This document shows, one piece after another, positions 15,335 through 63,900 of a stretch of 64,000 nucleotides of DNA (the stretch's first letter is position 1; each line of letters opens with the position of its first letter). The notes below the pieces were generated by a model. That model was given only the letters and a program-made list of their open reading frames with translations. It did no database searches and was not told the origin of the DNA. The DNA comes from Lepidodermella squamata (Eukaryota > Animalia > Gastrotricha), in the NCBI GenBank assembly GCA_047495785.1, contig JBLDXI010000025.1, positions 868,001 to 932,000 on the forward strand. The letters run 5' to 3'. The translations under genes were made by a program, and so were the position numbers.

Positions 15335-15543
15335 ACCTGAAGGGCCAGGGACTGACAGTACTTGTTCTTCTCGGTACCATGATGAGGTAAAATTTTTGGA
15401 ATCGAAGCCAAATCGAGGCAACTGGCGCAACTTAGAGCCTATACAACAGACAATAATTTTCCCAAAAAATTATTACAAAAGCAACGAAGCTTACTGCTTA
15501 CTGCGAAGATGGGGCGATTTTCTGGAACTAAAGGTGAAGTCAT
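15335..15543 (-). pseudogene. Remnant of RING exons of a RING-Bbox-CC-ANK gene
   Basis: 'ALSCASCLDLASIPKILPH' fragment; paralogous to 31960-32250. Confidence 0.6.
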
Positions 15544-15714
15544 TTCAGACACTTAGGAGGTCTAATACAAACAGCAATATATTAAATGCAAAGTTTTATA
15601 AGTATTAAAAGACGGTAACAATTGGAATAGCGATTGGAATAAAAATGAGGAAGTGAGAAGTAATCAAAGTGTCAATGGTACTAAATTTGAATTGGTTGAA
15701 ATATTGAAACTAGT

Positions 15715-18343
15715 TTAATCGTCTGTGAGAGAGCGAATTCGATGTCGCATTTCTTCGGGGTACTTTTCATCCATCCTGTCGATCGGTTTTTGCCCTTGGC
15801 AGTTCTTCTGCCGCAACAGGTCGCCAGCCTCGAGGAACCCGAGCAGATACTCGAGAATTTGCAATCTTTCAGCTTCCAACAGTACAAAATGAAACACGTT
15901 GTAACCATCGCAAGTTTTCGCCGTGATATCAGCACCACGATTAATCAGTAACGCGACAGTTTCAGTGGCGTTGCTGACTATAGCCATATGCAACGGCGTG
16001 AAGTTGTCTGAATTCTCGAAATTCACTGAGAGATCGAAATTGTCCAACAAATATTCAACACACTGGGTTCCACGGGGCTCCATACAAGCGGAATGGAGAG
16101 CCGAACTGCCATTGAAATCAACCTTCTTTACGTTATCAGGGCATTTTTCGAGTGCAAATTTCAGCATGTCCAGAGATCCTGATTCCGCGGCAGCACTCAC
16201 TAAGTCTACCTCCTCGACTGTTATTACATTCACATCCAAGCCGCAGTTATTGATCAGGAATTGCGCCGCTACAAGTTGACCCCGCTTGGCAGCTGTTAAA
16301 AGAGCGTTGTCGCCGTATGCCTCATCTTTCAGTACCCTGTCACCGGATATACGGAGCAATAGTTTCATAATTTCGATTTGTCCATTAGCGACTGCTGCAA
16401 GGAACGGTGTCTTTTGGTTTTCAACGGCAACACTAGCTATTTCTTCGGGTTTTTGATTGAGGAGATATTCAACAACTTCCAATCGTCCGTTCGCTGCAGC
16501 TTCGTGGATTGGACCGTAGCTTGCTTTATTCATTTCACTCCTGTCCGCGCCTTTCGATAGCAAGTATTCTGCAACTTTCAAGTGACCCTCTCGACACGCA
16601 ATCAGAAAAGCGGAATCCTTCCCGTCACTCAAACTGGAGATGTTAGCATTGAACTCTTCCACGAGAACCTTCGCGCATTCCAGGGATCCGGACGCTCATC
16701 GTTTTCGTTCTCATCGGCAACACTAGCTACTTCTTCAGGTTTTTGACTGAGGAGATATTCAACAACTTCCAATCGTCCCTTTGCCGCAGCTTCGTGGATT
16801 GGACCGTAGCCTGCTTTATTCTTTTCACTCAAATCAGCGCCTCTCGATATCAAGTATTCCGCAACTTTCAAGTGACCCTCTCGACACGCAATCAGAAAAG
16901 CGGAATCCTTCCCGTCACTCAAACTGGAGATGTTAGCATTGAACTCTTCCACGAGAACCTTCGCGCATTCCAGGGATCCGGACGCAGTAGATTGATGAAG
17001 CAGAGTCTTCCCGCCATCACCCGGATCTTTGTGCTCGACAGCCAATGGGATGCAGATTTCCGGCAGTTTCCTCAACATTGTAGACAGATTGGGGAAATCG
17101 CCATTTCTCGCAGCGGCGTGGAATTGCTCGAAATGATTACTCTGTGATGAAACACCAAAAATTGTGGTTGGTGCAGTAGGCAGCATTCTTACCTTAGCCT
17201 CGTTAAGATCCGGAAGCTTGGCACAGGTCATTCGGAAAGAATCACTCAATTGTCTAGCAATTGTTTCCTTCACCTCCTGGTTGCAATGCAATTCAATGCT
17301 GGGAACATTCGACTTGCTAGCCACTTCAAGCTTAGCAATCTAAAGGCTGGAGTTAAAGACCGCTTTTTAGACTCCTTTCGAAGAACAATACCTGGTGGGC
17401 CTGCTGAGTCACTGCATGGTGAACTTTCACGAAGAGATCCCCCACTTCGCCAATGACAGATTGAGAATTCGCTTTTGCCACAAGATCTTCAATTTCAAAG
17501 TTGGCTTTTGATAAAGCATCAGCATCGATTGATGGCTTCGAAAATTCGAGGTATGCTTTCTTCATTCCGTCCAGCTCTCGATGTAAAGCTTCACGACGCT
17601 GCTCGATCGCAACAATGTAAGATCCAAGTAGATCTGAGAAAAAATGGTCGATTTGGTCCTTAACCACCGAAATTGATTGATCAATTCTTTCTTCTGCAGC
17701 TTCAAAGTTCTTCGCTGCCGATGAAAGAATTTCTTCGGAGCCGTGTTTTACCTGCAAAATTAGATATTTGAAAACGTTTGACGACATGAGTGTACTTACG
17801 AAGAAGTAGTTCAAATTGAACTCTTGGCGGATGCGTTCCATGTGGACGATAAAGCAAACCGAGCAAAATGTCTCTTGGCAATGTTTGCAGATTTGCAGGG
17901 TTTTCTTAGAAACGTTTTTGACGTGAATACAATTTTCTCCAAGTTTTGCCTCTTTTGCCGATTTCCTCTCGTTTTTAATCGCCTCAACAGCTCCTTTCAC
18001 AATGTAGTTGTCTCGAAAACCTAGAAAAGGGCATTACCATTTCAGTGACATCTTGATTATGGTGTTAACTGCAACGAACCAGCCACGCCTGAAGCCGGTA
18101 AGACCTGCTTTGTTCGGCATTCTGGGCAATTGAAATGAGCTCCATGTGGCTGATTTTCAACCTGTAGCAAGCAGCGCATGCAAAACGTGTGCCCACATTG
18201 AGGCAGAATCTTAGGATTTCCAGCCAGATCCAAGCAAATGGAACAGCTAAGAGCCTAGAAAGAAAGGACCACTGCCCAACGTCATTCATGCAATCTGAAA
18301 AACTCACCGCTACGACTGCAGGCGAATCAGCTAATGATGACAT
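15715..18343 (-). pseudogene. RING-Bbox-CC-ankyrin gene, subtype A; frameshifted by a ~280-bp internal tandem duplication in the ankyrin exon
   Basis: Near-identical to 33087-35484. The segment ~16700-16985 duplicates ~16420-16697 with a frameshift at the join. Confidence 0.8.
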
Positions 18344-18379
18344 TGAAATCAGTAAAACAATCCTACAAGAAATTTAAGA

Positions 18380-18956
18380 AATGCGAAATGCATTACATTG
18401 CAATTTGCCACGTTCAAAAAATCTATTTTAGCGCCTTTACGCAACAATAACTTAACTGTAGCAACAGCGCAATTGTCGGCCGCCACATGCAACGGTGCAA
18501 AGCCGTTTTTGCACTTGACGTCATTGTCGAATGGATGGTTTTCGAGCAGATAAGCCACGCATTCACTGCTTTACCCGACAACGCGGAGTGAAGCAGGGCA
18601 CATCGACCATATCTTTTATCTTCGACAACGCTTCTGGAAAATGCAAACAAAGTCTTAGCAGCTTCGATTTGACTGTTTCCAAGTGCAGCCAGAAACGGCG
18701 TCTGATTTTCGTCATCAACAGCTTCAGGGCACGTTAACGCCTTTCGCCTTCGCAACTGTCTTGTGAACATCCTTCAGACATTCCAGGCAGAACGTGTGGC
18801 CACATTGCGGTAAGGTTTAAGGGCTCTTCAATAGATCAAGGCACATTGCACAGCTAAGACCCTTCAATCGGATTATCATTAAAACAGCATCATGAGAGTA
18901 AAAGGGGAACTCACTGCAACAATGTTGCGGTCGTCATTTTTAGAAACCGTTGCCAT
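18380..18956 (-). pseudogene. Heavily deleted subtype-B RING-ANK copy
   Basis: Exon 1 'MATVSKNDDRNIVA', a RING fragment and ankyrin pieces matching 35570-38342. Confidence 0.7.
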
Positions 18957-19189
18957 TCGAACAATACAATACAATACAAATACAATAATACCTAAAATAT
19001 CTAAGTATATTAGGTTTATATTAGGCAGTATGATGCATTTATAGAAGTCAAACTTGTCTGAAAGTCGGACCAAATTAAAACTGTAAAAATTCATGTTGCA
19101 TAAAAAATTGAGAACAATATTCGCAGCGGCCTATTAAAACGACCCTTTAAAACGACGTGAGGTCATTACAAATATTTCAATTCGATAAA

Positions 19190-19390
19190 TTAACCGCTTT
19201 TGTGCAAACGCAATCGATCATGCACTGCTTCGGGATAATTTTCATCAACCAAGTTGGCTTCTCTCTTTGAGATTATTCGCCCGCATCGGTTTTCCTGCTT
19301 GGCAAGTCGTTTCAAGTCACCGTTGTTACCCCCAACATAGCTGCGATATCAGCCCCACGTCCAAGCAACAACGCTGCTCTTTGGCAGCAC
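19190..19390 (-). pseudogene. 3' ankyrin remnant (subtype A)
   Basis: Matches the ends of 22591-22830 and 38541-38790. Confidence 0.55.
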
Positions 19391-22590: not shown

Positions 22591-25029
22591 TTAACAGCTT
22601 GTGAGCAAACGCAATCGATTATGCACTTCTTCAGGAGAATTTTCATCAACCAAGTCAACTAGCCTCTCCCCTCTGAGATTTTTCGCTCGCAGCAGTTTAC
22701 CAGCTTCAGGTCGCTCGAGCATTTGCTCCAGAACAGGCAAAAATGCAACATCGTGCAAAGCATAATGTAGAACGTTGTAACACCCAAGATTTGTAGCTGT
22801 GATATCAGCCCCACGATCAAGCAACAACGCAGCTGTTTCAATGGCATTGTTAGAGACCGCGATAAGCAACGGCGTGCTTTCTGCAAAGAAGCTCCAAAGA
22901 AAAATCGTAGTTATCCAACAAATATTCAACGCATTTAGTTCCACCGGACTCTTGGCAAGCGGCGTGAAGCAACGTAAACTCATCAGAATCAACATCATAG
23001 ACTGAGTCAGGAAGCTTTGAAATCGCAAATTTCAACATTTCAAGAGATCCAGATCCAGCGGCACAAATGAGGAAACTTTCGTCACGAGCTGTCAGCTCGC
23101 TGGGATTCATGTCACATTCATTAATCAGAAATTTCGCTGCTTCTACTTGGCCATGCTTCGCAGCAGTCATCAATGCATTGTCGCCGCTGTCATTGTCATC
23201 CAACACCTTGTTGCCAGATATTCGAATTAGAAGCTTCATCATTTCAATTTGCCCATTCGCAGAAGCCACTAGAAAAGGCGTCATATCGACATAACTCACG
23301 TTGCTGGAGATTTCTTCCGGATTTTGAGCGAGAATATATTCAGCGATCCCCAAATGTCCATTTGCAGCGGCTTCGTGGATCGGCGCAAATCCATTTATAT
23401 TCTTCAATGTCAAGTCTGAACCTTTTGATAACAAGTATTTTGCAACTTTCAGATGACCTTTCCGGCATGCTAGAAGAAAAGCCGTATCGCCCTCAGCGCT
23501 CGAAGCACAGATGTTGGCGCTGAAATCCTCTACTAGCATCTTGACGCATTTCAAGGATCCAGTTTCGCACGATTGCAGCAGCATAGTCTTCACATCGTCA
23601 TTATAATCTCTATGTTCGACTACTAAGGGTATGCAGATTTCGGGCAGCTTTTTCATAACCACAGACAACTTCGAAACATCGCCGCTTTTAGCAGCAGCAT
23701 GAAACTGATCAAACATATGATACTAAAGACAGTATTTTGAATTAATGATTATTAGGCCGGAAGAAATACCTCAGCAATGGCATCATCCAATTCCGGAGAT
23801 TTGGTTGAAGTTAATCGCAAGGCATTGACTAATTGATCTGCTATGGTTTTCTTAACCTCGAGATTGCAAGAGAAGTCAATTCTAGGAACGTCCAACTTGC
23901 TAGCAAGCACCAGTTTTGCGATCTGAATGTGAAAAATGAGAGAGGTACAGATTTACCATGGCCAGTTGCATAAATTTAAAAAATGAGGAAAGACAGGGAT
24001 TAGAATCATTATATTCATCGACAGCAATATTTTATAAGTAAGACATACTTTTTCAAAGAATGGTTATTTCAAATAGCGATACCTTGTTTGCCTGATTGGA
24101 AACCTTATCATGAACTTTCACAAAGACATCTCCCGTTTCGCCAAGAACTGATTTGGAGTTCGCTTTTGCTACAAGACCAGAGATTTCGGTTTTAGCCTTA
24201 GCGAGGCCTCAGTATCGATTGAAGGCCTTGAAATCTCCAGGTATTCCTTCCTCATAGCGTCAAGCTTTTCATGTAAAGTTTCGCGACGCAGTTCAACCGC
24301 AGCTTTGAATGATTCAACTAGATCCGAGCAACAGTTGTCAATTTGGCCTTTAACGTAAGACATAGTTCTATCAATTTTGTCTTCAGCAGTTTCAGAGTTT
24401 TTGGACGCGGGGGAGACAGCTTGCTCAAAGCAGTCTTCAAACTAGAATTAAAACAGAATAATCGGCTTGATTTCAGATACTGCAGAGGATTGCTTACAAA
24501 GAAATAGCTCAAGTTAAACTCTTGGCGGATTTGTTCCATATGAGCGACAAAGCAGATCGAACAGAATCTGTCTTCACAATGTTTGCAAAGTTTCAGATTT
24601 TTCTTCGGCAGACGCTGAGCGTGAGGACATTTTTCTCCAATGTTCGCTTCCTCGGCTAATTTCCTCTCGCTTTCAATCGCACAGACCGCTCCTTTGACAA
24701 CATAGTTGTCGGGCAAACCTTCAGCGAGAAATTATAACTATTTTTTAGTTTCAATGTTGAACTAACCGGTAATACCGGAGGGCGGTATGATCTGTCTCGC
24801 TCGACATTCTGGGCACTTGAAATGAGACTCGTTATTCTTGTAGACTTGCTCCTAGCATTTCCGGCAGAAGGTGTGCCCACACTGAGGCAACATCTTAGGA
24901 TTTTCTGCCAGATCCAAGCAAATAGAGCAGCTCAGAACCTGCAAATAAAGAACCACTGCTGAACGTCACTCATAGGATCTAACGAAAACTCACTGAAACG
25001 ATTGATGTAACGTCTGCTGATGATGACAT
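22591..25029 (-). pseudogene. RING-Bbox-CC-ankyrin gene, subtype A; premature TAG in the RING exon and a frameshift near 22880
   Basis: Six-exon structure retained. AAA TGC TAG at ~24852, where paralog 43623-47046 has TGC TTG. Confidence 0.8.
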
Positions 25030-25116: not shown

Positions 25117-26750
25117 TCAGTTTCGTCCAGCTAATAACAACTGACGTTTCAAATCATCCGGCAAACTTTGGTCCATAACATCGATTGGTGTATTTCCGCT
25201 TGCGTTTTTGGTTTGTAACAAGGCCTTTACGCCAGGATGTCTGAGCAAAACTTGAATAATTTCAGCTCTGTTACCTCTTTCCAGAGCGGAATGCATCACG
25301 TTTTGATGACCTTTGGTGGTCACAATATTAATGTTAGCGCCTTTTCTCAACAACAGTTCAACTGTTGCGAGAGCGTTTGCGTGGACCGCTAAATGTAGAG
25401 CTGTGAAGCCGAATCTGCCCTTTGTGACGTCATTAACTGAAAACGAATGATATTCAAGCAAATAATCCACGCTCTTGCTGCCTTCCGGATTCGTGCAAGC
25501 GTTGTGTATAGCCAAATAACCAAGTTCGTCCGCTTCCATCAGCATATCTGGGCAGCGTTCTATCGCAAATTTCAGCATGGCCAAGTTTCCAGAATATGCG
25601 GCGCAGTGTATCAAATTTTCGTCTTTGTCAGACTTGGATTCGACAACAGCACCACATTCATAGAGCAAAAATTTGACAGCTTCAACCTGACCCTTGTAAG
25701 CGGCGTGGTGCAGCGCACAGCGTCCCTCAGCTTCTTTATCGTTCAAAACTCCCCTCGAGAACTCAAACATGGCCCTTGCAGCTTCAATTTTGCCATTCTC
25801 GACGGCAACAAGGAAAGGCGTCTTAGCATTTTTTCCAGAGATTTAATTGCATCAGGCGCTTTCTCTAGAATGAACTTGACAATGTCGACATGCCCATTCA
25901 GAATCTCCTTCAACATTTGAAGAGAGGACGTTGGAGTTATATTCTTCTATTATCAGTTTGACGCAATCCAGTGATCCAGCTTCAGATGATTGATGCAGCA
26001 TCGTATTTCCAGAATCACTTGAATCTCTATGATCAACAACCAATGGCACGCCAATATCAGGTAGCTTCTTCATAAGCGAGGACAACTTCGCTAAACAGCC
26101 TTCCTTCGCAGCTACGTGGAACTTTTCGAATTGAAACTTCTAGAAAGAGACTTTCGAAGGAATTTTTCTGATTAGGGGTCAAATTCTACCTCGAAACTAG
26201 CTTCACTGAGCTCCGGAGGGTTGATAGAAGTCAGTTCAAAAGCATCACTTAATTGATTCGCGGATGTTTTCTTGACCTCGCCATGGCAAGAAAATTCAAT
26301 TTTAGGATCAATCCGTTTGCTAACCAGCACAAGCTTCGCAATCTGTATTCAATTATTCACCGGAAAATGCATGAGTTTGTAATGAAGAAAACCTGATTTG
26401 CCTGCTTCGAAACCTCATCATGGACCATGGTCTTTCAAACTTAGGTTCATCGAAGGTTTAATTGAATGCCTTCCAAAACAATTCTAACTAACCAGCCACA
26501 CCTGACACCTGAAGCCGGCAACGCCTGATTTGTTCGGCATTCTGGGCACTGAAACGATGTTCCTTGTGGAAGCTTCTCAAACACCAGCTTCAAGCACCCT
26601 AGGCAATAGGTATGCCCGCATTGAGGCAGAATCTTGGGGTTTTCTGTTAGATCCAAGCAAATAGAGCAGGTTTTCCAAACTCGGAAGGATTCAAACTCTT
26701 CACAAAGAGCTCACCGCTACGATTGGAGGCAAATCGGCTGAAGATGACAT
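25117..26750 (-). pseudogene. Chimeric RING-ANK pseudogene: 5' part of subtype A fused out of frame to the 3' ankyrins of subtype B
   Basis: 25900-26750 matches 50830-52308; 25117-25899 matches 47164-47947. Confidence 0.75.
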
Positions 26751-31959: not shown

Positions 31960-32928
31960 CTGAAGGGCCAGGGGCTGACAGTACTTGTTCTTCTCGGTAC
32001 TCCGGACACACCCATGTACCACAGTCTGGTAAAAAAATTTATATGATTTGCAAGCATTCCAGAAAAAACTACTGACCATGTTGAGGTGAAATTTTTGGAA
32101 TCGAAGCCAAATCGAGGCAACTGGCGCAATTTAGAGCCTATACAACAGACAAGAATTTTCCCAAAAAAAATTATCACAACAGCAACGAAGCTTACTGCTT
32201 ACTGCGAAGATGGGGCGATTTTCTGGAACTGGAAAGGTGAAGTCATTTCAGACACTTCGGAGGTCTTAGAGCAAGATATTAAATGGTACTAAATTTGAAT
32301 AGGTTGAAATATTGAAACTAGTTCAATTGTCATTTCAGACACTTAGGAGGTCTAATACAAACAGCAAGATATTAACTGCAAGTTTTATAAGTGTTAACAG
32401 ACGGTAACAACACTTGGTAGTACTTGGATTGGACCGTTGCCTGCTTTATTCTTTTCACTCATGTCTGCGCCTTTCAATAACAAGTATTCTGCAACTTGCA
32501 AGTGACCCTCTCGACACGCAATCAGGTATCCTTTCCGTCACTCAAACTGGCATTGAACTCTTCCACGAGAACCTTCGCGCATTCCAGAGATCCGGAAGCA
32601 GCAGATTGACGAAGAAGAGTCTTCCCGCCATCACCCGAGTCTTTGTGCTCGACTACCAACGGGATGCAGATCTTCTCGTTGTTCTTCTCGGCACTCCGGA
32701 CATGCTAAAGCGCCACCATTTGGCAGTGTTTTGTAAATTCTCTCCAAGCATTCCAAGCAAAACGAGTGACCACATTGAGGTAAAATTTTTGGAATCGAAG
32801 CCAGGTCGAGGCAAATGGCGCAACTTAGAGCCTGTATAACATACACAAATTTGCCTAAAAATTATCAAAAAGACGGCGAAGCTTACTGCAAAAATGGGGC
32901 GATTTTCAGGAACTAAAGGCGAAGTCAT
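31960..32928 (-). pseudogene. Two deleted RING-ANK remnants
   Basis: 'ALSCAICLDLASIPKILPQCGHSFCLECL...CPECR' fused directly to ankyrin fragments; a second partial copy lies at 31960-32250. Confidence 0.7.
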
Positions 32929-46600: not shown

Positions 46601-47046
46601 GTTTCAGATTTTTCTCCGGCAGGCGCTGAACGTGAGGACACTTTTCTCCAATTTTCGCTTCCTCGGCTAAATTCCTCTCGCTTTCAATCGCACAAACCGC
46701 TCCTTTGACAACATAGTTATCAGGCAAACCTTTGGCGAGAAAATGTAGTTATCTTTAAGTTTCACTGTTATGATTGATTAAACCTGTAATACCAGAGGGC
46801 GGTATGGTCTGTCTCGTTCGACATTCTGGGCACTTGAAATGAGACTCGTTATTCTTATAAACTTGCTCCAAGCATTCCCGGCAGAAGGTGTGCCCACACT
46901 GAGGCAACATCGTGGGATTTTCTGCCAAATCCAAGCAAATAGAGCAGCTGAGAGCCTGCAAAGAAAGCACCACAGCTATACACCCTTCATAGAATCTTTC
47001 AAAAACTCACCTAAACGATCGATGGCATGTCTGCTGATGATGACAT
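43623..47046 (-). pseudogene. RING-Bbox-CC-ankyrin gene, subtype A, inactivated (stops, frameshifts, hAT insertion)
   Basis: TAG at the end of exon 1 and at 46530; ankyrin ORF split into three; insertion at 45213-46220 in the coiled-coil exon. Confidence 0.85.
45213..46220. mobile_element. Non-autonomous hAT-type element (1008 bp)
   Basis: TIR TAGTGATGCGCT(T/A)CGATT, exact 8-bp TSD GTATCGAT, ATTAATCGA-type subterminal repeats. Empty site in the paralog at ~24212. Confidence 0.92.
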
Positions 47047-52398: not shown

Positions 52399-54943
52399 TC
52401 ACTGTTTTCCTGCTAATAACAGGACTTGATGCTTCAAGTCATCCGAAATATCCGTGTCCATAATGTCGATGGGCGTTTTTCCTTCGGAGTTTTTGGCTTG
52501 TAACAAGGCTTTCGCGTCAGGGCATTTGAGCAAGACTTGAATCATGGAATAGCTTTGAACGTTTTGCAAAGCAGAATGCATGACGTTATTACCCTTAGCC
52601 GACAAAATGTTAAATTTCGCTCCTTTTCGCAACAGGAGTTCGACAGTTTCGGCAACACCGTCGGTTGCCGCCACAAGCAATGGGGTTAGAGAGTATTCGT
52701 TTTTGGTCACTTCTTCAACAGAAAACTGATAATTTTCGAGCAAATAAGCTACGCAATCGCTGCCAGTAGGCTCTGAGCAAGCGAAATGAAGAGCCGAGAA
52801 GCCATATCCGTCCCGTTCCTTCAACATATCTGGGCAGCGGTCGATAGCAAATTCCAGCATGGATAGATTTCCAGATGATGCAGCGCAATGTATCAAATTT
52901 TCATGATTGTCCGACTTGGCTCTGACATCTGCGCCGCATTCATCGAGCAGGAATCGAACGGCGTCAACCTGGCCTGAGAAAGCGGCGCGAAGAAGCGCAC
53001 ATCGACCCTTCGCTTTGTCTTTAACGACCTTCTTTGAGAAGTTTAATAAAACCCTGGCGACTTCGATTCGACCATTCTCAACTGCGACAATAAAAGGCGT
53101 TTTATCTTCGACATCACAAAAGTTGATCAAATCAGGCGATTTATCGAGTAAGAATTTAACAACGTCGACATGTCCGTTCTTGGCAGCGCAGTTTATTGCA
53201 ATATTCTCCATCAGCTCATCTGAGGTCGCATATAGCAGTTCCACGATGTTGAGATGGCCTTCTTTGCAGGCGAGTGTGAAAGCTGTATCGTCGTCATCTG
53301 TGGAGTTCTCCAAGTCTGCCAGGTCCCTTTCGAGCAACAGCTTAACAGTATTGTAAGCCCCATCGGCAGAAGCTGAGCAAAGCAGATCGAAACCCTCTTC
53401 CATTTCGATGTCAGCTAGTTCAGGCTCGATTTCTAACAGGAAATTGACGATATCTGGATGTGAGATGGCAAGATGGCAGGCTGTTTCTTCGGTCGAATAA
53501 GCCTGGGCGAGCAAATTTGGTTTCAGTTTTTTGACAATCAACCGGACGCATTCCAGAGATCCAGCCTCAGCCGCCTGGAGCAGAAGCGTCGTTCTATCAT
53601 CAGAACGGTCAGGATGATCGCCGACTAGCTTGCGACACTGTGGAGGTAGCTGAGAGATCAAGCTGGAAAGCCTATCAAAATCACCCATTTTAGCTGCGTC
53701 ATGGAATTCTTGGTACTGGAAATCCTTTTGAAAAAAAACACGCTTAGTATAAGCATAGGATTTTAATAACTCGGCACCTTCATCGTTGCATTGTCATCAG
53801 TAATACCAGGAGGCATTTTGAGAGTAACTTTACAGCTTTCATCTAGCAAGCTCTTGATCTTCTGTGCGACAGCAGGATCCCACAGCAGTGAAATTTCGGG
53901 ATCCTTCAACTTGTTTCTGGCACATACTCTTGCCACCTAAAATGACAAAAATTAAGCTTGATACTGTTGAAAAAATTGCGTCATACATTCATCGATTGAT
54001 CTAAGATTGTTTTATGAGTTCTGATGAATAGATCAGCAGGGTTCTCAAGCAATGATTTTTTATTCGCTTTCGCCAACAAAGCAAGGCTTGCAGACAGCTG
54101 ACCTCGCATGGCCTCAAAGTCAGACAACGGATTCATGGAATCAACTGCTTGTTGCTGCATTTGTTTCAGTGTTGCACGTAGATTCTCACGATGTTCTACC
54201 ACAACGGCTTGAAAATTTTCGATCAAGGCAGAACATGAATCTAGGATTTGCTGATCAAGCCGCTCAACGTTTTCAGCGATCTGCTTCTTTGAAGAGTTGG
54301 CGCGAATAGAACACTCCTCAACAGCTAATTCGAACCGTTCTTTCAGCTGTAATAGTCTAATTTGAAGCGGCGGAAAGAGGAACAAATACATACCCTAAAA
54401 CCAGCCAAATCGAACTCCTGCCGGATTTTTTCCATATGCAAAGCGAAGCAGGATGGACAGAAGGACTGATTGCAATGATCGCAGTGCTTCAAGTCTGCTT
54501 TGACTGTGAATGGGGCATGGGTGCAGTTTTCGCCTATTTTGGCCCGCTTAGCGTTGGTCCCCTCGGTTGTTAAGACTTCAATTGCTCGTTTCACAGCATA
54601 ATTATCGCTTAGTGCTTTGAATTACATAAAATGATTCATCTTCAAACATAAGAAAATACGATGATATTCACCTTTCAGTCCGGCTGTAGGTAAAATTTGC
54701 TCCTGACGGCATTCGGGGCAGATTAGAGGCCCTCCTTTAGCAGCTTTTTTGTAGACGTCCTTCAAGCAATCCAGGCAGAAGGTATGACCGCATTTCGGTA
54801 GAGATTTTGGATGTTTAAGCAGCTCGAGGCAGACAGCGCAGCTAAGGGCCTATCACAAAAGCTCTATCTAAAATGATATTGATGTTCGGGCATAAACTCA
54901 CGGCAACAATGTTGCGGTCATCATTTTTGGATACCGGTTTCAT
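52399..54943 (-). CDS. RING-Bbox-like-coiled coil-ankyrin repeat protein, subtype B, apparently intact (6 exons)
   Basis: Conserved exon structure with frame maintained across all five introns; 429-aa ankyrin ORF. Confidence 0.82.
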
Positions 54944-55132: not shown

Positions 55133-57696
55133 TCAATTTTTTCCAGCCAATGAAGTCAATTGACGTTTCAAATCCTCCTGCAGACCTTGGTCCATAACTT
55201 CGATGGGAGTTTTTCCATCCGAGTTCTTGGCTTGCAACAAAGCTTTTACGCCAGGGTGTTTGAGCAAACCTTGAACAACGTCATCGTTTCCAGCTTTTCT
55301 CACAGCCACATGCATCACGTTGTTACAATTAGACGACAAACTATCAATTTTCGCGCCTTTTTGTAGCAACAGTTCAACTGTTGCAGCAGCGCCATTTTCT
55401 GCCGCTATATGCAACGGGGCTTCAGCCGACTCGCACTTGGTCAGGTCATCAACTGTAAACGGATGGTTTTCGAGCAAATAAGCTACGCATTTGCTGCCAT
55501 TACTATCAATGCAACTGAGGTGAAGAGATGAGTAGCCATAGCCATCCGTGTCCATGACCATAGTTGGGTAGCGTTCTACAGCCCATTTCAGCATAGCCAA
55601 ATTACCTGATAAAGCAGCGCAATGAATCAAATTTTCGTTATCGTCAGACTTGGATTCGACATCCGCATTGCACTCATCTATCAAGAATTTAACAGTGTCA
55701 AAGTGTCCCTCGGCGGCAGCGTGAAGCAGTGCACAGCGATGACTCTCGGCTTTATCGTTCAAAACTTCCTTCGAGAACTCAAACATAGCCCTAGCAGCTT
55801 CGATTTTGCCCGTTTCAACTGAGACAAAAAAAGGAGTTTTATCATCGCTATCCCGGGATTTAATTTCATCCGGCGACTTTTCCAGAATGAACTTGATGAT
55901 GTCGACATGCCCATTCCGAGCTGCGCAATGTATCACACAATCCACAATCACCGTCTCCGACTTCGAATATAACAGCTCCACTATGTCGAGGCGGCCATTT
56001 TTGCAGGCGAGAGTGACTGCCGTGTCACCATTGTCTGTAGTGTTATCCAGGTCTACCAGGTTCTTCTCGATCAATAACTTGACAGTATCGCACGCGCCTC
56101 TGTCCGCAGCCAGACATAATAGATCCCAACCACCATCCGACTCGATTTCAGCCAGTTCAGGTTCAATTTCTAATAGAAAATCGACAATGTCTGGATGCGA
56201 GATGGCGAGATGGCAGGCAGTTTCTTCGGTTAAATCAGATTGAGCGAACAAATTCGGCTTCAATTTCTTGACAATCAATCGGACGCATTCGAGAGATCCA
56301 GCCGCAGCCGCCTGGAGGAGAAGTGTTTTTCCGTCATCAGAGCAGTCAGGATGATCAGCAACCAGCCTACGACATTGCGGCGCTAGCTGCGAGATCAAGC
56401 TTGACAGTCTATTGAGGTCACCGGATTTCGCCGCTTCGTGAAACTCCTCATGCTGAAAGTCCTATTCGGCACACATCGGTTTGATATGTAGCAGCATATT
56501 TCTGTGACTGTACCTTCATTGCGTTGTCATCAATGACAGTTGCCGGAGCTTGTTTCAAGTTAACTTGACAGCATTCATCGAGCAAGCGTTTGATCTGTTG
56601 CGCGACAGCAGGTTCCCATCGCAAAGAAATTTCCGGTTCCTCCAACTTACTCATGGCGCAAACTCTTGCCACCTAATATCAAAAATAATAATACACCCGT
56701 AAATAAAACACCTACGTACATTTTTCGACTGATCTAAGATCGTTTTGTGAGCTCGTAGAAAAAGATCGGCGGGATTTTCTAGCAGCGTTTTTTTGTTCGC
56801 TTTCGAAAGCAACGCAATGCCCTTCGATAGCTGACTTTCCATCGCCTCGAACTCCGCCGTCGGATTGATTGAGTTCAAAGCTTCATGTCGCATCTGCTTC
56901 AAAGTACTACGAAGATTAGAGCCAAGTTCGACAACGATTGCTTCCAATGATTCAATCAATGCAGTGCACGATGCTTGAATTTTCTGATCGAGCTGTTCCA
57001 CCTTTTCATTTAATTCTTTTGCTTTCGATTTGGCTCGAAGCGAGCAACCATCAACGGCCGATGCAAATCGTTCTTTCAGCTGCGAGAGAATTGTTCAAAG
57101 ATAGGAAAACCAAAAATATGCGGTGTCATACCCTAAAACCAGCCAAATTGAACTCCTGTCGGATTTTTTCCATGTGAAGAGCAAAGCAGGCCGGACAAAA
57201 TTTTTGGTTGCAATGGTCGCAATGGTTAAGATCCTTTTTCACCGTGAACGGAGCATGGGAACAGCTCTCGCCAATTTTGGTTCGATCGCCGTTGCTCTCC
57301 TCAGTTTTTATTACTTCAATTGCTCGTAAAACTGCATAGTTATTGCTAAGCGCTTTACAGTTTGAGGGAGAGAAAATAAGATCCGAAAAGAATAAAGAAA
57401 TAATAGGCTACCTCTTAGTCCAGTATAACCGGCAGGGGATAAAATCACCTCCTGACGGCATTCAGGGCACGATAATGCAGCCCCTTTGGGAACTTTCTTG
57501 TAGATATCCATTAGACAATCGAGACAGAAGGTGTGACCACATTTTGGTAGAGATTTTGGGTGTCTGAGCAGCTCGAGGCAGACAGCGCAGCTAAGGGCCT
57601 ATCACAAACGCCTAATTTCAAAACTGTTTTTTGCTAATTAGGACATTAACTCACGGAAACAATGCTGCGGTCATCACTCTTGGTAAACGATTTCAT
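55133..57696 (-). CDS. RING-Bbox-like-coiled coil-ankyrin repeat protein, subtype B, apparently intact (6 exons)
   Basis: MKSFTKSDDRSIVS exon 1, then RING, B-box-like, coiled coil and a 421-aa ankyrin ORF. Confidence 0.82.
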
Positions 57697-58075: not shown

Positions 58076-60709
58076 TCATATCGTGTGAACAGGCAATGCA
58101 CGCAAGCATAACTTGTGCGGCTGATTGGACACCGATTCATTTTCAGCCAAGGACAACAGTTTATTTTTCACATCCTCTGGTAATTCCTGGTTCATCGCGT
58201 CGATAGGCGTTTTACCTTTCGAATTTTTGGCTGACAATAACGCTTTCGCATCAGGGTGTTTAAGAAGAAATTCAAGCACACCCTCATCACTGACACAATG
58301 TTTCAGGGCGCAATGCATCAAATTATAACCATCAGACGTTACAACATTAAAATCAGCGCCTCTTTGCAACAAAACTTCGACCGTGTGAACTATTTGATTA
58401 TTGACTGCCAAATACCGCGGTGACTTGCCACGTTCGCATTGAGTAACATCATGAACAGTAAACGGATAGTTATCCATTAGATATAAAACGCAACTAGGGT
58501 CCTCTGCCATACCGTAGCATGCGTTGTGAAGAGCCGAAAAGCCATATCCGTCATGGCTCATCAGCAGGTTGGGGCATCGCTCTATCGCAAATTTGAGCAT
58601 GTCTAAATGTCCGGAAAACGCGGCACAGTGAATCAAATTCTCGCCTTCTGCCGAGGTCGTTCCAGCATCAGCTCCACATTCGTCAATCAAAAACTTCGCA
58701 GACTCAACCTGGCCAGTGCGAGCAGCATATAATAATGCACATCGACCTTCGATCTCATCGCCTAGTACTTTTTCCGAGAAGTCAAAAATGGCCCTCATAA
58801 CTTCGATCTGTCTATTTTCAACTGCGGATAGGAAAAGCGTTCTATCTTGGTCATCACGGTGTTTGATCTCATGCGGTAACTTTTCCAGGAGGAATTTAAC
58901 CACATCGGCATGTCCGTTCAAAGCAGCGCAGTGAATAGGACTTGGCTTTTCAAAGTTGAATATCTGGTCATCAAGGCTAGCAAGCGTGCAACCTGTATTG
59001 CTGCAATCCGAACGGTGCTCCAAGTCGACCATGTTATTTTCGAAAAGCAGCTTCAGAGTCTCTAGTGAGCCCTTCGCAGCAGCGTGGCAAAACAGGTCGA
59101 ACCGATCATATGACTCAATTTTTGCTAGTTTGGGCTCAATTTCCAGGAGGAATTCAACAATCTCTGGATGTGAAACGGCAATATGACAAGCAGATTCCCC
59201 GTTAGCACAGTCTCGTACCAGTAGTTTAGGTTTCAACTTAGTGACGATTAGGCGGATGCATGATAAAGATCCAGCTGCAGCAGCTTGGAGGAACAGGGTG
59301 TTGTAGTCATCCGTGAAGTCTGGATGATCAGCAATCAACTCACGGCATTGTGATGGCAGTTGGGAAATCAACGTGGCAAATTTTTCAAAGTCACCATGTT
59401 TCGCGGCTTCGTGGAATTCTTGATACCGAAAGCCCTGAGCAAATTTACATGAAAATATCAGATCGAAAAAAAGACTAAACAGAAGTTTCAAATCAGAAAC
59501 AAGGCTGCGGAAAAATACCTTAACAGTTTCTTCATCATCCGAAATAACCGGGGGAGGATCTAATACCAATTTACAGCTTCCATTCAACAAGTCGTTGACC
59601 TTCATCAAGAGATCTGGGTCCTGCATCAGTGAAATTGCCGGGCCCTTCGACTTGCTACCAGCATATACCTTGGCAACCTGAATTTGGAAAATACGGAATC
59701 GTCATAAAATGAGGTGATACTAATTATAATACTTTCTTAGACTGATCTGATATTGCTTTATGGGTCCGAAGGATTAAATCGATAGGACCTTTAAGCATCG
59801 ATTTCTTGTTCGCTTTCGCGAGTAACGTCACGCTTTCTGAAATAGAACTGCGCAACGCCTCTAAATCAGCAGTTGGGTGCATGGAATCAACGGCTTGTTG
59901 CCGCATTTGCTTCAGTGTAGCGCGTAGATTCTCGCGATGTTCAACAACAACAGCTTGAAATGATCCCATCAATGCAGCACATGAAGCTTGGATTTGCATA
60001 TCCAGCTGCTCAACGATTTCATCTATTTTCTTAGTTTCGGATTTAGTTCGAATCAGAGACTGCTCCACAGCCGACTCGAACCGTTCTTTAAGCTGAGGGA
60101 ATTCAATCAAAGCAATTCGTTTTCGCGAAATGAAACATACCCTAAAACCGGTCAAGTTAAATTCCTGCCGGATTCTTTCCAAGTGCAGCGCAAAGCAGGA
60201 TGGACATAATACTTGATTACAGTGATCGCAGTGCTTCAAGTCGCTTTTAGAAGTAAACGAGGCGTGAACGCAAGCATCGCCAATTCGGGCTCGTTTTGCG
60301 TTATTGGCTTTCACTTCACTTGTTATAACATCAACCGCTCGTTTTACAGCATAGTTATCTTTCAGTGCTGTGAATTCAGGAGAGAAAACCGTAACCCAGC
60401 AATTTCATGGGGTACAATTTTAACCTTTCAATCCGCCTAAACCGTGCACAGGTAACTTCTGCTCGCTACGGCATTCAGGGCACGACAATGCATCACTTTT
60501 TGCCACTTTTTCGTAGATCTGCTTCAAGCAATTCATGCAGAAAGTATGGCCACATTGAGGTAGGGTTTTCGGATTCTTAAGCAGTCCGAGGCAAACAGAA
60601 CAACTGAGAGCCTTCAAATAGCAAGACGTTTCATCCAAGTCAATTAAAAAAATGAAGGTAAACTCACCGCAAAAATATTCTGCTTTTCGTTCTTGGCGAC
60701 CGATGACAT
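58076..60709 (-). CDS. RING-Bbox-like-coiled coil-ankyrin repeat protein, subtype B, apparently intact, 777 aa; exons 60709-60668, 60611-60425, 60367-60141, 60092-59733, 59677-59519, 59434-58076
   Basis: GT..AG introns give a single frame. RING CSVC...CGHTFCMNC...CPEC; Zn motif CVH...CDHC-x4-CPSC-x3-H. Confidence 0.85.
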
Positions 60710-60926: not shown

Positions 60927-61263
60927 CGTCGCGTTGCGTTTGAAAGGGGCCGCTCTCGAAATGATCTATACAATGATCGGCTTAAAAAACGGCACTTTAT
61001 TAGCTGATTCCCATAGCGGGCGCGACGGTTAGCGAGAGTAGCAATAAAAAAATACTGTCACTTGGTGGCGATAATATAAGTGAAACACCATTAGAACAAA
61101 TTCAAGCTTCGAATGACCCCGAAAGTAATCATGTTTTTACCAACTGCGACTTAGGGTAGATCATCTCGAGAGTAACAATGTAAATTTTGGGTCAGATTCG
61201 GTTTTTCTACTATATTGAAACAATAATAAAAACATAGCGGCCCCTTTCAAACGCAACGTGACG
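60927..61263. mobile_element. 337-bp MITE
   Basis: 28-bp near-perfect TIR CGTCGCGTTGCGTTTGAAAGGGGCCGCT; flanks ATAG/AAAG. Confidence 0.8.
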
Positions 61264-61379
61264 AAAGGTATTCTTTGCGAATAATTTCAACATTGTTCCG
61301 AACATCATATTCATAGTTCCAATGTGGCTTCATGTTAAAATTTGACCAGTGTTTCTCCGTGGGTACTCCAATTCAAATA

Positions 61380-63900
61380 GCAATGATACCAACCCAAAAC
61401 GCTCGAAACGTGAATGCAGTTGCCGCACATCTCAGCTTAAATTGATCGCATCCACCGCTCGCTTTATAGCATAGTTGTCGCTCAGGGCTAAAAAATTGAA
61501 AACTGTTAGAAAAATATTGTTATGGATTTAGATTAGAAAAATATTAACTGTTAGAAAATTAGTGATAAACACGTGCTCGTCTGTATTTTTGTGAAGCGTC
61601 GGCCTACGCAAGGCCTGGCAGGCCTAGCGATGGAATTTAGGTCTAGGAGTGTGTGAAGCTCAACCTTCAAGGTGTCTAAGGTGGCCGGTCACAAAGGCGA
61701 TCAACCTGTCGCCCTACTAGTCATTAAAGCTGGTCAAAGTAGCCAAGTCAGTGGGAGCAAGAAAGCGAAGGCTCGAAAGCAACCTGTCACCAGAGAAGGC
61801 GATCAGTTCGATCAAACAGCGGTCCGGAGGAGGTACCACGTAGATTCAGCAGATAACCATTACCTATGAACTTACGTTCGGACGACCAAAGCAACGAAAT
61901 AGACGTCTAACAGGTCGATGATCGTTCAACTGTCGCTGGAAAATCCGGCAAAACTACACGTGCAGCCCGAGAAGCCGAGAAGCATTTCGCGAAGGAGGTC
62001 GAGTCATTTCAGGAAATAACATGGGTGCTACAACTAGGCGACATTTTCCGCAAATCTTCAACCCGGTCTGAGAAATGGCTGTCAGGAAGAAGGGAAAGCT
62101 CACAAATCTTTCGTGTTTGTGGAATGATTCGTTATAATCCAGCTGGAATACCTGACATCGCTTACGCTTCGTCGGATGCACACTGAGCCACGTTCCCTCA
62201 AAATTCGAGAACGATGATGACATTCGTGGCAGAAACTACTACAAGCAATCTCGCTGGAAAATCTCACCGTGGTACAAAGCTTTCAACCGTTTCGTTGCGG
62301 AAGCTGTGGCCAATATTCGGGCGGATGATTTGGCACAGGACGACTCTGTGTCGCCGATCACCCTCCAAAACAGTTGCGACATCCGCTATCTGCTGAAAAA
62401 TTTCATAAAGCACATACTTCCCCTTTTTCCACTGTGTTCGGTGTGTTTTATTTGCGGAGTTGCTGATTTTCGATAGTTTGTTTTGAAAGGAAATTAAATT
62501 ATCGCTAACAAAATTGCAGTGAAACCCAAAAACTCGCCAGCTCATTACACCAATGGTTGCGTTGAAGAGGCAATCAATCTAACGAAAAATGCTGAAATGC
62601 CCAGCGGTGCGTTGCCTTTGGCTCAGGCTATTCGTGTTCTAAGAGCGGCTCAGCGTCGCCGCTTTAAAGCAGCAACGATTCCCAACAAGCCGGAACAACC
62701 TCGAAAAGGGGAACAGGCGACAATACCACTGAAAAATGGCGCCGCAGCGCGAGGATGGGTAATAAGAAGAAAAACTTGCTGACCTATGGCAAAACCCTTT
62801 CGAAGCGACTTTTATCATCTGCAAACAAACTAGGAAATTTTTGCAAAAGCAGCCACTGCATTTGGATTCTATCGCAGATATTGAAGGGTTGCATTCAGAA
62901 GCGCAGGAATTACCTTCTCAATCAATTCCAAATCCATGCAAACCGCCCGCTGCGATGCGATCAATAAATGCAACAGGTTAGTGCAGTAATAAATGCAGAA
63001 ATAAATGTAAAATTTTCATAGCGTCAGTGTCGCCAAGCAGCAACTAGACCTGTCAAAGCGATATCTTCATCCAATTGCTTTCAGTGAACCTGGAATCGAC
63101 TCAGATGATAGTAGCTAGGGCAATGACGATGAGCCGCGCGAAGCGAACGACGAGAGAAGGTCTACGCGTCGCGGCTAAATTCATGACTGCACTTGTTTTA
63201 ATTTATATCTCATACTTATTTCAAGATTTTCGTTGTTTATTACCGATGACATGGTTTAGGGAGAAAACTCGCTGTTTCAATTCATGATAAATTGCTATAA
63301 TATCACCGGTATTCGGGGCAGGTATCCCAAATCGCACTATTTCAATTTTTCGCACGATTTCTCCGCAGCGGTGAGGACTTTTCGACAAATGAGCACGCAA
63401 TATGAAGGTAATTTTGTTAGCTACAAGTGTAAATGCTCGATTAGACGGCGTCGACGGCCTTGATACAGTGCGGCCGAGAGTGAAGTGGTTCAGATACTAT
63501 TCAGAATTAGGAGTTTTCGTCTTACTGAGAAATTCTGAAGTCTTCGCTTAGCTACCGTGGTAATCCCACTGGTAGTCTTCCGAGATATTTCCTTTCATTA
63601 ATAGGTATTTATGCCAAAAGTAAATAAATTATGAAACTAAAGCAAACGGGTCTACCTGTAACCCAGTCGAGCAGGCGGTCAGAAAAGCCTGTTCGACATA
63701 GCAGTGAATTCTCAAGACTCTTTCGCGACGTCGCTGAGTTGGATTGCATGGCAGCATGCAGGTATGGTTTTCGAATTGTTGGATAGCGAGGCACACGGCG
63801 CATCTCAGATCCTTCAGGAAAAAATGAAACACACTTTTATGGGTAAATAGGTAAAAACTCACCGACAACTATCCGATCATCATCTCTTTTAGGCGAAGGC
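61380..63900 (-). pseudogene. Degraded RING-family copy split by ~2 kb of foreign sequence
   Basis: Exon-1-like 'DDRIVV|GTGAG' at ~63862, 'DLRCAVCL' at ~63790-63810, and exon-3-like 'ALSDNYAIKRAVDAI' at ~61440-61487. Confidence 0.55.
62180..62790 (+). mobile_element. Possible degraded MULE-related (NOF/FB-like) transposase fragment
   Basis: Frameshifted motifs 'SPWYKAF...YLLKNFIKHILPFF' followed by 'HYTNGCVEEAINLTK'; similarity recalled from memory, not searched. Confidence 0.35.

What the first reader, a model, noticed from the sequence alone, without database searches (positions are those of the whole stretch)
15335..63900. Large tandem family of TRIM-like RING-Bbox-coiled coil-ANKYRIN genes (candidate diversified ubiquitin-ligase receptor system)
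Seen: about 18 same-strand copies or remnants share one 6-exon plan. Exon 2 is a C3HC4 RING, exon 3 a C-x-H...C-x2-C-x4-C-x2-C-x3-H Zn motif, exon 4 a coiled coil (360 nt in both copies measured), and exon 6 holds 9-11 ankyrin repeats. Five copies are intact; the rest are dead. Established: the standard TRIM subclasses end in PRY-SPRY, COS/FN3, NHL/filamin, PHD-bromo, MATH, ARF or TM domains, not ankyrins. Known RING+ANK proteins (BARD1, Mind bomb, plant XB3/KEG) lack the RBCC tripartite motif. Inference: this is a lineage-specific birth-and-death family using ankyrin solenoids as variable substrate or pathogen sensors coupled to an E3 ligase, analogous to fish finTRIM expansions.
Basis: partly seen in the sequence, partly recalled or inferred. 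Interest (0 to 1): 0.92.

Follow-up and report, generated by a model that had tools for sequence, protein, structure and literature searches.

The report
Tandem RING–zinc–coiled-coil–ankyrin ligase genes
An unidentified eukaryote carries a 46-kb same-strand cluster of about 15 genes and gene wrecks (five intact) for ubiquitin ligases built like TRIM proteins but ending in ankyrin repeats; the architecture is real and almost absent from databases, but nothing shows it is an immune sensor.

Summary
On the minus strand between about 15.3 and 61.5 kb lie 14 RING exons plus one truncated one. Five copies are complete six-exon genes of 691-777 aa, and all 25 of their introns are GT..AG and 47-111 nt long. 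Exon 2 is a TRIM-type C3HC4 RING that passes Pfam's cut-off. Exon 6 holds 8-11 ankyrin repeats. Exon 4 is a 357-360 nt helical segment.

Exon 3 is a zinc module with eight invariant ligands (C-x-H-x11-C-x-H-C-x4-C-x2-C-x3-H). Pfam's B-box model does not match it. Its best solved-structure match is PML B-box 1, which is only borderline. A RING+zinc model of a relative best matches the TRIM21 RING-B-box structure and the TRIM28 tripartite motif. I call it B-box-like, not proven.

The only relatives are unannotated metagenome contigs with the same tandem layout, and mollusc 'nhl-1-like' RING-NHL proteins.

Birth-and-death evolution is shown by a block duplication, a transposon insertion, tandem duplications and stop codons. 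The pathogen-sensor idea is not supported: omega is about 0.1-0.2 in every domain, the ankyrins included, and the intact paralogs are old (dS > 1).

Verdict: a new variant of a known kind, of moderate interest.

The parts
58076..60709 (-). G1, intact type-A gene, 777 aa. Exons: 60709-60668, 60611-60425 (RING), 60367-60141 (zinc module), 60092-59733 (coiled coil), 59677-59519 (linker), 59434-58076 (ankyrin).
   Evidence: Spliced model with 5 GT..AG introns and no internal stop. Pfam finds the RING and the ankyrin repeats.
55133..57696 (-). G2, intact type-A gene, 765 aa. Exons: 57696-57655, 57598-57412, 57352-57132, 57079-56720, 56672-56514, 56461-55133.
52399..54943 (-). G3, intact type-A gene, 761 aa. 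Exons: 54943-54902, 54849-54672, 54614-54394, 54346-53987, 53936-53778, 53724-52399.
   Evidence: Pfam ankyrin hit. AlphaFold model of exon 3.
49951..52308 (-). G4, type-B pseudogene. A 71-bp tandem duplication (51746-51886) shifts the frame in exon 3. Exon 6 has stops and a frame change.
   Evidence: tblastn matches in different frames and with stops. Tandem Repeats Finder.
47164..49768 (-). G5, intact type-A gene, 766 aa. Exons: 49768-49727, 49668-49482, 49427-49207, 49158-48802 (357 nt), 48746-48588, 48498-47164.
43632..47046 (-). G6, type-B pseudogene. Exon 3 has a stop. Exon 4 is split by a 1008-bp insertion with 22-nt terminal inverted repeats (45213-46220). Exon 6 has stops.
35576..38253 (-). 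G7, type-A pseudogene. Exons 2 and 4 have frame changes. Exons 4 and 6 have stops.
33087..35484 (-). G8, intact type-B gene, 691 aa. Exons: 35484-35449, 35395-35221, 35161-34941, 34892-34533, 34421-34275, 34223-33087. It lacks about two ankyrin repeats relative to type A.
31967..32831 (-). G9 and G10, remnants. G9 is a RING exon at 32831-32655 fused to a piece of exon 6 (32674-32424). G10 is a RING exon with stops at 32137-31967.
25120..26750 (-). G11, deletion chimera. It has exons 1, 2 and 5 of a G4-like copy joined to the C-terminal half of a G5-like ankyrin exon. There is no zinc or coiled-coil exon.
22600..24938 (-). G12, type-B pseudogene. Exon 2 has a stop. Exons 4 and 6 have frame changes. 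It is the duplicate counterpart of G6.
18379..18956 (-). G13, remnant. It consists of exon 1, a RING exon with stops, and two pieces of exon 6. It is the counterpart of G7.
15715..18343 (-). G14, a young copy of G8 with 93% nucleotide identity, introns included. A 290-bp tandem duplication in exon 6 (16412-16985) disables it by shifting the frame.
15334..15438 (-). G15, a truncated RING-exon relic at the low-coordinate edge of the array.
   Evidence: E = 1.8e-5.
61175..61485 (-). Fragments resembling exon 3 upstream of G1. They mark the high-coordinate edge of the array.
7809..8015 (-). An isolated relic resembling the zinc exon, with a stop. It lies outside the coordinates given in the finding.

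Best explanation
The region is a tandem array that evolves by birth and death. Its genes encode TRIM-like single-chain RING E3 ubiquitin ligases whose target-binding end is an ankyrin-repeat solenoid.

Each intact gene has six exons and encodes, in order:
- a C3HC4 RING with all eight ligands and the CPxCR motif; the RING would recruit an E2 enzyme charged with ubiquitin;
- a helical linker;
- a two-zinc module with eight invariant Cys/His, sitting where TRIMs carry a B-box and most likely a diverged B-box;
- a helical segment of about 120 aa, compatible with a coiled coil, that would dimerise the protein;
- a linker of about 50 aa;
- 8-11 ankyrin repeats that would hold the substrate.

Shown here: the gene models, the RING and ankyrin identities, the conserved zinc ligands, purifying selection, homology to mollusc nhl-1-like TRIM-like proteins, and the history of duplication and decay.

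Inferred: ligase activity, coiled-coil dimerisation, the ankyrins as the substrate-binding part, and any biological role.

The paralogs most likely bind different targets, because they differ mainly at exposed ankyrin positions. Each is conserved for its own function rather than racing with pathogens.
For: Gene models:
- Five complete coding sequences with 25/25 GT..AG introns and conserved phases.

Domains:
- The RING passes Pfam cut-offs, including the TRIM-type zf-C3HC4_4 model.
- Ankyrin matches are strong, with 8-11 repeats.
- Eight Cys/His are invariant across 18 family and relative sequences.
- Exon 4 shows helical periodicity above shuffles in 4 of 5 copies. AlphaFold places a helix running out of the zinc module.

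TRIM likeness:
- The RING+zinc model of relative P0121 best matches TRIM21 RING-B-box (5olm; E = 0.012, probability 1.0, 107 columns). Next come TRIM RING domains and the TRIM28 tripartite motif (6qaj).
- PML B-box 1 is the best solved-structure sequence hit.
- hhalign gives 94% probability of homology to the Crassostrea nhl-1-like protein across the zinc module and the start of the coiled coil. These proteins were also hits in the search of 1.8 billion representative proteins.

One transcript:
- In metagenome relatives, RING and zinc module lie in one ORF, and coiled coil and ankyrins lie in another.
- In L006, the one junction I examined, the two ORFs are joined by a 52-nt phase-0 GT..AG intron at the position of the window's intron 3.
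- In P0118, RING, zinc module and coiled coil are one ORF.

Selection and history:
- Omega is 0.1-0.2 in all domains.
- A multi-gene block has been duplicated and one copy has decayed. The lesions are catalogued.
Against: - There are no transcript data, so the splicing is predicted, not observed.
- Pfam's B-box model does not match exon 3 even at E <= 10. Weak hits scatter over FYVE, IBR, the Trim66 B-box and the ANCHR-like B-box.
- Foldseek with the zinc module alone gives no hit with E < 1 and no B-box among the top 50 matches listed.
- The Foldseek E-values for the RING+zinc model are marginal (0.01-0.1), are driven largely by the RING, and the RMSD is high when both domains are aligned.
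- Coiled-coil dimerisation was not tested. The periodicity test is weak (p about 0.01-0.03, not significant in G5).
- The source organism is unknown, so no biology can be attached.
Confidence: 0.72

Rival explanations
1. It is a diversified innate-immune receptor repertoire. The ankyrin solenoids would be fast-evolving pathogen sensors coupled to a ligase, as in fish finTRIM or primate TRIM5.
For: - The genes form a tandem array with many pseudogenes and block duplication.
- Differences between paralogs concentrate at ankyrin positions 8, 11, 12, 14 and 17 and in the loop at 31-35. These are the usual ligand-contact faces.
- An AIG1/GIMAP-type GTPase gene lies in the same window.
Against: - Omega is 0.12-0.22 in the ankyrin exon, no higher than in the RING or zinc exons.
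- The young pair G8/G14 has omega 0.21 in the ankyrin half and 0.18 in the N-terminal half.
- The intact paralogs are old, with saturated synonymous sites. Surface positions vary in any ankyrin family.
- There are no expression or infection data.
- Site-wise tests were not possible with five saturated sequences.
Confidence: 0.15
2. The family is TRIM-like only by convergence. Exon 3 would be a separate kind of zinc finger (PHD-, FYVE- or IBR-like) rather than a B-box. The proteins would then be a distinct RING-zinc finger-helical-ankyrin class sharing ancestry only with nhl-1-like RING proteins.
For: - There is no PF00643 match. Sub-threshold hits go to FYVE (4 members), IBR (4+2) and the RIM2a zinc finger.
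- KMT2D PHD fingers score almost as well as PML B-box 1.
- The zinc-only model hits PHD, RING, FYVE and LIM folds at E > 1.
- The ligand pattern departs from both B-box types: C-x-H as the first pair, an invariant His inside C-x-H-C, and no terminal His.
- The mollusc relatives also lack a Pfam B-box hit. Marin 2012 brackets Nhl-1 as TRIM-like only.
Against: - The spacing C-x2-C-x4-C-x2-C-x3-H equals that of B-box 1.
- The module sits exactly between a TRIM-type RING and a long helix.
- The best whole-domain solved-structure alignment is to a B-box.
- The best two-domain structural match is TRIM21 RING-B-box, and the TRIM28 tripartite motif is also matched.
- Two members weakly hit the Trim66 B-box model and one hits the ANCHR-like B-box model.
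Confidence: 0.25
3. The RING/zinc/coiled-coil exons and the ankyrin exon are separate genes or transcripts that merely alternate along the array.
For: - There are no transcript data.
- Prokaryote-style gene callers list them as separate ORFs on the metagenome contigs.
- One relative (L001) has a Neuralized domain instead of ankyrins after the same N-terminal module.
Against: - In all five intact copies the six exons join in frame through canonical short introns with conserved phases.
- The linker exon 5 is under purifying selection, with omega 0.2-0.47.
- Where the ankyrin ORF has an ATG, it falls inside the first ankyrin repeats or the linker, so it would truncate the domain.
- The alternation and the intron position are conserved in relatives that are 30-45% identical.
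- In the relatives, coiled coil and ankyrins share one ORF.
Confidence: 0.05

Closest known systems
TRIM/RBCC ubiquitin ligases, especially subfamily C (the TRIM-NHL group) and the TRIM-like nhl-1 proteins of invertebrates
   Same: - An N-terminal TRIM-type C3HC4 RING, a helical linker, and a two-zinc module in the B-box position.
- A helical segment of about 120 aa and a linker of about 50 aa before the C-terminal binding domain.
- Detectable homology of the zinc and coiled-coil region to Lottia and Crassostrea nhl-1-like proteins.
- TRIM21 and TRIM28 as the best structural matches.
- A modular C-terminus: ankyrins here, Neuralized in L001, NHL in molluscs.
   Different: - The C-terminal domain is ankyrin repeats, which are not among the recognised TRIM classes. 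That is my own knowledge; Marin 2012 and Sardiello 2008 do not mention ankyrin.
- The zinc module is not recognised by Pfam's B-box model and has its own ligand pattern (C-x-H ... C-x-H-C ... C-x2-C-x3-H).
Fish finTRIM and other tandemly expanded B30.2 (PRY-SPRY) TRIMs
   Same: Tandem same-strand clusters, many paralogs and pseudogenes, and a RING, zinc module and coiled-coil scaffold with a variable C-terminal binding domain.
   Different: - There is no B30.2 domain.
- There is no sign of positive selection (omega 0.1-0.2).
- The intact paralogs are ancient, not recent.
ASB proteins (ankyrin repeats plus SOCS box), which are the substrate receptors of Cullin-5 ligases
   Same: Ankyrin repeats used as the substrate-recognition part of a ubiquitin ligase, in a multi-member family.
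   Different: ASB proteins have no RING, zinc module or coiled coil of their own, and they act through a C-terminal SOCS box. Pfam found no SOCS box here.
Known RING+ankyrin ligases: Mind bomb, plant XB3/XBAT and KEG, and BARD1
   Same: RING and ankyrin repeats in one chain. The Pfam model RING_XB3-XBAT31 matches weakly (30 bits against a cut-off of 50).
   Different: - The order is reversed in Mind bomb and XB3, where the ankyrins precede C-terminal RINGs.
- These proteins have no zinc module plus coiled coil between RING and ankyrins.
- None of the extra domains (the Mind bomb-specific N-terminal domains (Mib/Herc2, ZZ, REP), kinase, BRCT) is present here.
P0020, an unannotated 831-aa metagenome protein with a weak RING-like region, SH3, two B-boxes, a coiled coil and ankyrins
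   Same: A B-box, coiled-coil and ankyrin order. This shows that the combination has arisen elsewhere.
   Different: - Its B-box is canonical (Pfam, 41 bits).
- Its RING is sub-threshold, and an SH3 domain is inserted.
- It shows no specific similarity to the window family beyond the generic ankyrin repeats, so it is an independent assembly.

Membership tests
TRIM / RBCC | N-terminal C3HC4 RING finger | tested here: met
   Pfam zf-C3HC4_4 scores 40 bits (cut-off 30), and zf-RING_UBOX and zf-C3HC4 are above cut-off in G1 and G8. All eight ligands are present in the five intact copies. Foldseek hits are TRIM RING domains (on relative P0121).
TRIM / RBCC | A B-box zinc-binding domain (type 1 or 2) directly after the RING | tested here: inconclusive
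   Against: there is no PF00643 match at E <= 10, and the zinc-only model has no B-box hit. For: eight invariant ligands, with the spacing C-x2-C-x4-C-x2-C-x3-H as in B-box 1. PML B-box 1 is the top solved-structure sequence hit, at E = 0.096. TRIM21 RING-B-box is the top structural hit of the two-domain model. There are weak hits to the Trim66 and ANCHR-like B-box models.
TRIM / RBCC | A coiled coil of about 100-130 aa after the B-box that forms an antiparallel dimer | tested here: inconclusive
   The segment is 119-120 aa with few Pro or Gly residues. Helical periodicity exceeds shuffles in 4 of 5 copies. A helix leaves the zinc module in both AlphaFold models. Dimerisation cannot be tested with these tools.
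TRIM / RBCC | Fixed order RING, then B-box, then coiled coil, at the N-terminus, with a variable C-terminal domain | tested here: met
   Spliced models. The same N-terminal module occurs with ankyrins (the window, L002-L006), with Neuralized (L001) and with NHL (molluscs).
finTRIM-like immune TRIM expansion | B30.2 (PRY-SPRY) C-terminal domain with positively selected loops | tested here: not met
   No SPRY domain was found. Omega is 0.12-0.22 in the C-terminal domain. Site-level tests were not possible.
ASB (ankyrin-SOCS box) | C-terminal SOCS box | tested here: not met
   The Pfam scan of the ankyrin exons lists only ankyrin families.
Mind bomb / XB3-type ankyrin-RING ligases | Ankyrin repeats N-terminal to one or more C-terminal RINGs | tested here: not met
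   Here the RING is N-terminal and the ankyrins are C-terminal. RING_XB3-XBAT31 scores 30 bits, below its cut-off of 50.

The most novel reading that the evidence does not exclude
This would be an undescribed TRIM subfamily, present in at least two unsampled eukaryotic lineages, in which an ankyrin solenoid replaces the usual SPRY or NHL domain as a diversifiable recognition module. The classical B-box would be replaced by a new eight-ligand variant (C-H / C-H-C / C-C-H), shared with nhl-1-like proteins. If the array also varies in copy number and responds to infection, it would be a new kind of intracellular immune receptor repertoire.
Probability: 0.15. Interest if true: 0.7.

Novelty: new variant of a known kind. 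Interest (0 to 1): 0.45.

Why it matters
TRIM ligases are a major, modular class of E3 enzymes. Their C-terminal domain decides what they bind.

A TRIM-like scaffold ending in ankyrin repeats adds a binding module that the accepted classification lacks. It shows the same N-terminal module recombining with ankyrin, Neuralized and NHL domains.

The conserved zinc module is invisible to the standard B-box profile. It could therefore explain why relatives such as nhl-1 are scored as 'TRIM-like without a B-box'. It is also a concrete target for a new profile and a solved structure.

The family is almost absent from a library of 1.8 billion representative proteins, so the lineage that carries it is poorly sampled.

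Set against this, domain shuffling and tandem expansion of RING ligases are commonplace in eukaryotes, and nothing here points to an unusual mechanism.

Tried and rejected
Searches for relatives:
- The search for homologous proteins with the ankyrin ORF returned only generic ankyrin proteins of 29% identity or less.
- JGI metagenome and IMG/VR scans found no family member. One JGI contig matched the RING only. Two earlier calls failed because the alignment was too diverse.

Attempts to name the source organism, all unsuccessful:
- The class-C-like GPCR had no homolog and is not on record.
- The best AIG1 hits were 23-32% identical and taxonomically scattered.
- There were no tRNA or Rfam matches.
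- The sample codes are not in the literature library.

B-box tests that did not settle the question:
- Pfam on exon 3 and on 18 members.
- hhalign against the canonical B-boxes of P0020 gave 5% probability.
- Foldseek with the exon-3 model gave nothing below E = 1.

Ideas rejected:
- A viral or prokaryotic origin, because of the spliceosomal introns and the absence of viral relatives.
- Chance ORFs, because of omega well below 1, the Pfam domains and the conservation in relatives.

Not done:
- The spliced full-length proteins could not be submitted to the database, family or structure tools, because they have no reference. All such work was done exon by exon or on naturally contiguous relatives.

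Full report
**What is there.** The window is eukaryotic nuclear DNA with 39-45% GC. Long minus-strand ORFs between 15.7 and 60.3 kb encode ankyrin repeats (Pfam Ank_2, E 1e-44 to 1e-54). Reading the minus strand upstream of one of them gave a six-exon model with canonical splice sites. A second, more diverged copy gave a second model.

tblastn with the exon peptides of both models maps the family:
- 14 RING exons, one truncated RING exon (15438-15334) and several isolated exon relics, all on the minus strand, from 15.3 to 61.5 kb.
- One relic resembling the zinc exon lies outside the stated range, at 8015-7809.
- There are two subtypes. Type A has about 765 aa and 9-11 ankyrin repeats. Type B has 691 aa and lacks about two repeats.

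**Intact genes.** G1, G2, G3, G5 and G8 assemble into stop-free coding sequences of 777, 765, 761, 766 and 691 aa. All 25 introns are GT..AG and 47-111 nt long, and the phases are conserved. Exon 4 is 360 nt in four copies and 357 nt in G5.

**Dead copies.**
- G4 has a 71-bp tandem duplication in exon 3 and stops in exon 6.
- G6 has a stop in exon 3, stops in exon 6, and a 1008-bp insertion with 22-nt terminal inverted repeats in exon 4.
- G7 and G12 have several frame changes and stops.
- G11 is a deletion chimera.
- G9, G10, G13 and G15 are fragments.
- G14 is 93% identical to G8 across exons and introns. A 290-bp tandem duplication in exon 6 is its only large lesion.

Self-alignment shows that the block 15.4-26.8 kb is a decayed duplicate of the block 32.8-52.4 kb, at 78-94% identity. 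The array therefore grew by multi-gene segmental duplication followed by loss. That is birth-and-death evolution.

**Domains.**
- Exon 2 is a RING above Pfam cut-offs, including the TRIM-type zf-C3HC4_4 model. It carries all eight ligands and the CPxCR motif.
- Exon 3 starts with a conserved helix (D-N-Y-x-V-K-x-A). It then carries eight residues that are invariant in 18 sequences from the window and its relatives: C-x-H-x11-C-x-H-C-x4-C-x2-C-x3-H. Pfam's zf-B_box model does not match at E <= 10. Weak hits scatter over FYVE, IBR, the Trim66 B-box and the ANCHR-like B-box.
- A profile of the module finds PML B-box 1 (2mvw) as the best of all solved-structure sequences. The E-value is 0.93, improving to 0.096 with a full-domain alignment once the mollusc relatives are added. 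KMT2D PHD fingers follow closely.
- AlphaFold on G3 exon 3 gives a moderately confident core (pLDDT 84-87). Foldseek finds nothing below E = 1 with it.
- A model of the naturally contiguous RING+zinc protein P0121 has pLDDT 74. Its best match is TRIM21 RING-B-box (5olm; E = 0.012, probability 1.0, 107 aligned columns). Next come the RINGs of TRIM23, 21, 69, 25, 32 and 2, and the TRIM28 tripartite motif (6qaj, 143 columns).
- I conclude that the module is a two-zinc finger in the B-box position, most likely a diverged B-box. Strict membership is unproven.
- Exon 4 has few Pro or Gly residues and shows helical hydrophobic periodicity above shuffles in four of five copies. Dimerisation was not tested.

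**Relatives.** A profile of the zinc module plus coiled coil was scored against 1.84 billion representative proteins. It gave only 16 hits with E <= 1e-3, the best at 2.6e-10.
- Most hits are short ORFs from ENA metagenome assemblies.
- Their contigs (L002-L006, 36-38% GC) show same-strand tandem units every 2-3 kb. Each unit is a RING+zinc ORF followed by an ORF of about 450 aa holding a coiled coil and diverged ankyrins.
- In L006 the two ORFs join through a 52-nt phase-0 GT..AG intron at the position of the window's intron 3.
- P0118 (contig L001, 42% GC) has RING, zinc module and coiled coil in one ORF. It is 28% identical to G2 over 271 aa (E = 2e-27). A Neuralized-domain ORF follows it.
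- The only annotated relatives are Lottia and Crassostrea 'nhl-1-like' RING-NHL proteins. They share the C-x-H-C-x4-C-x2-C-x3-H core and align with 94% hhalign probability.
- Marin 2012 lists Nhl-1 as TRIM-like within the TRIM-NHL subfamily.
- No member was found in IMG/VR or in JGI metagenomes.
- An unrelated metagenome protein, P0020, has a canonical B-box, a coiled coil and ankyrins. Similar combinations have therefore arisen independently.

**Selection.**
- Among the five intact copies, synonymous sites are saturated (dS > 1). Omega is 0.1-0.2 in the RING, zinc and ankyrin exons, 0.15-0.3 in the coiled coil among the type-A copies, and somewhat higher in the linker.
- The young pair G8/G14 gives dN = 0.031 and dS = 0.157. 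Omega is 0.18 in the N-terminal half and 0.21 in the ankyrin half.
- Paralog differences concentrate at ankyrin positions 8, 11, 12, 14 and 17 and in the inter-repeat loop. This fits different binding specificities, but it is expected of exposed positions in any ankyrin family.
- There is thus no evidence for an arms race.

**Literature.** Full-text searches for TRIM or RBCC together with ankyrin found no description of this architecture. The two main TRIM classification papers do not mention ankyrin.

**Limits.**
- The organism could not be identified.
- Spliced proteins could not be submitted to the external tools, so domain and structure work was done exon by exon or on relatives.
- No transcript data exist.

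**Verdict.** I rate the novelty as a new variant of a known kind, and the interest as moderate (0.45).

Noticed in passing
window 2484-5637 (-): There is an AIG1/GIMAP-type GTPase ORF (2484-3851; Pfam AIG1, E = 3e-24). The ORF just upstream overlaps it and holds 7.5 tandem copies of a 138-bp (46-aa) repeat (4085-5110). The two may be one gene. The best database relatives are only 23-32% identical.
   Followed up: partly
window 27548-29851 (+): A single-exon 767-aa ORF has an ANF_receptor ligand-binding domain and a hydrophobic C-terminal part, like a class-C GPCR. It sits inside the array on the opposite strand. It had no homolog at E <= 1e-5 and is not on record.
   Followed up: partly
window 11087-13088 (+): A piggyBac-type transposase (Pfam DDE_Tnp_1_7) is split over two ORFs in different frames. 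It is a decayed transposon just beyond the low-coordinate end of the array.
   Followed up: no
window 45213-46220: A 1008-bp insertion with 22-nt terminal inverted repeats (91% complementary) and no long ORF interrupts exon 4 of pseudogene G6. It is absent from the duplicate copy G12. It is probably a non-autonomous DNA transposon.
   Followed up: partly
window 15383-26802 versus 32776-52359: A large segmental duplication of a multi-gene block: G14 matches G8, G13 matches G7, G12 matches G6, and G11 matches parts of G5 and G4. The spacers are duplicated too. Identity is 78-94%, with deletions in the lower copy.
   Followed up: yes
window 41755-42228 (+), with related DNA at 39143-39841 and 20669-21560: An ORF with a weak PAN/apple-domain match (E = 0.0018) lies in the spacer between family members. 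The spacer sequence is itself repeated two or three times.
   Followed up: no
window, the gaps between consecutive family genes: Stop-to-ATG distances are only about 90-380 nt (for example 52399 to 52308 and 35576 to 35484). In the four upstream regions inspected (G2, G3, G5, G8) a sequence ending in AG lies 15-20 nt before the start codon. This fits a very compact genome, and possibly operon-like transcription with trans-splicing.
   Followed up: no
L001:4464-6499: On a metagenome contig of 42% GC, the same RING-zinc-coiled-coil module (P0118) is followed by a Neuralized (NHR) domain ORF instead of ankyrins. The N-terminal module therefore recombines with different C-terminal domains.
   Followed up: partly
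P0124, P0128, P0130 (mollusc RING-NHL 'nhl-1-like' proteins): These annotated TRIM-NHL-like proteins carry the same C-x-H-C-x4-C-x2-C-x3-H core before their coiled coil, yet get no Pfam B-box hit. The standard B-box profile seems to miss this whole variant.
   Followed up: partly
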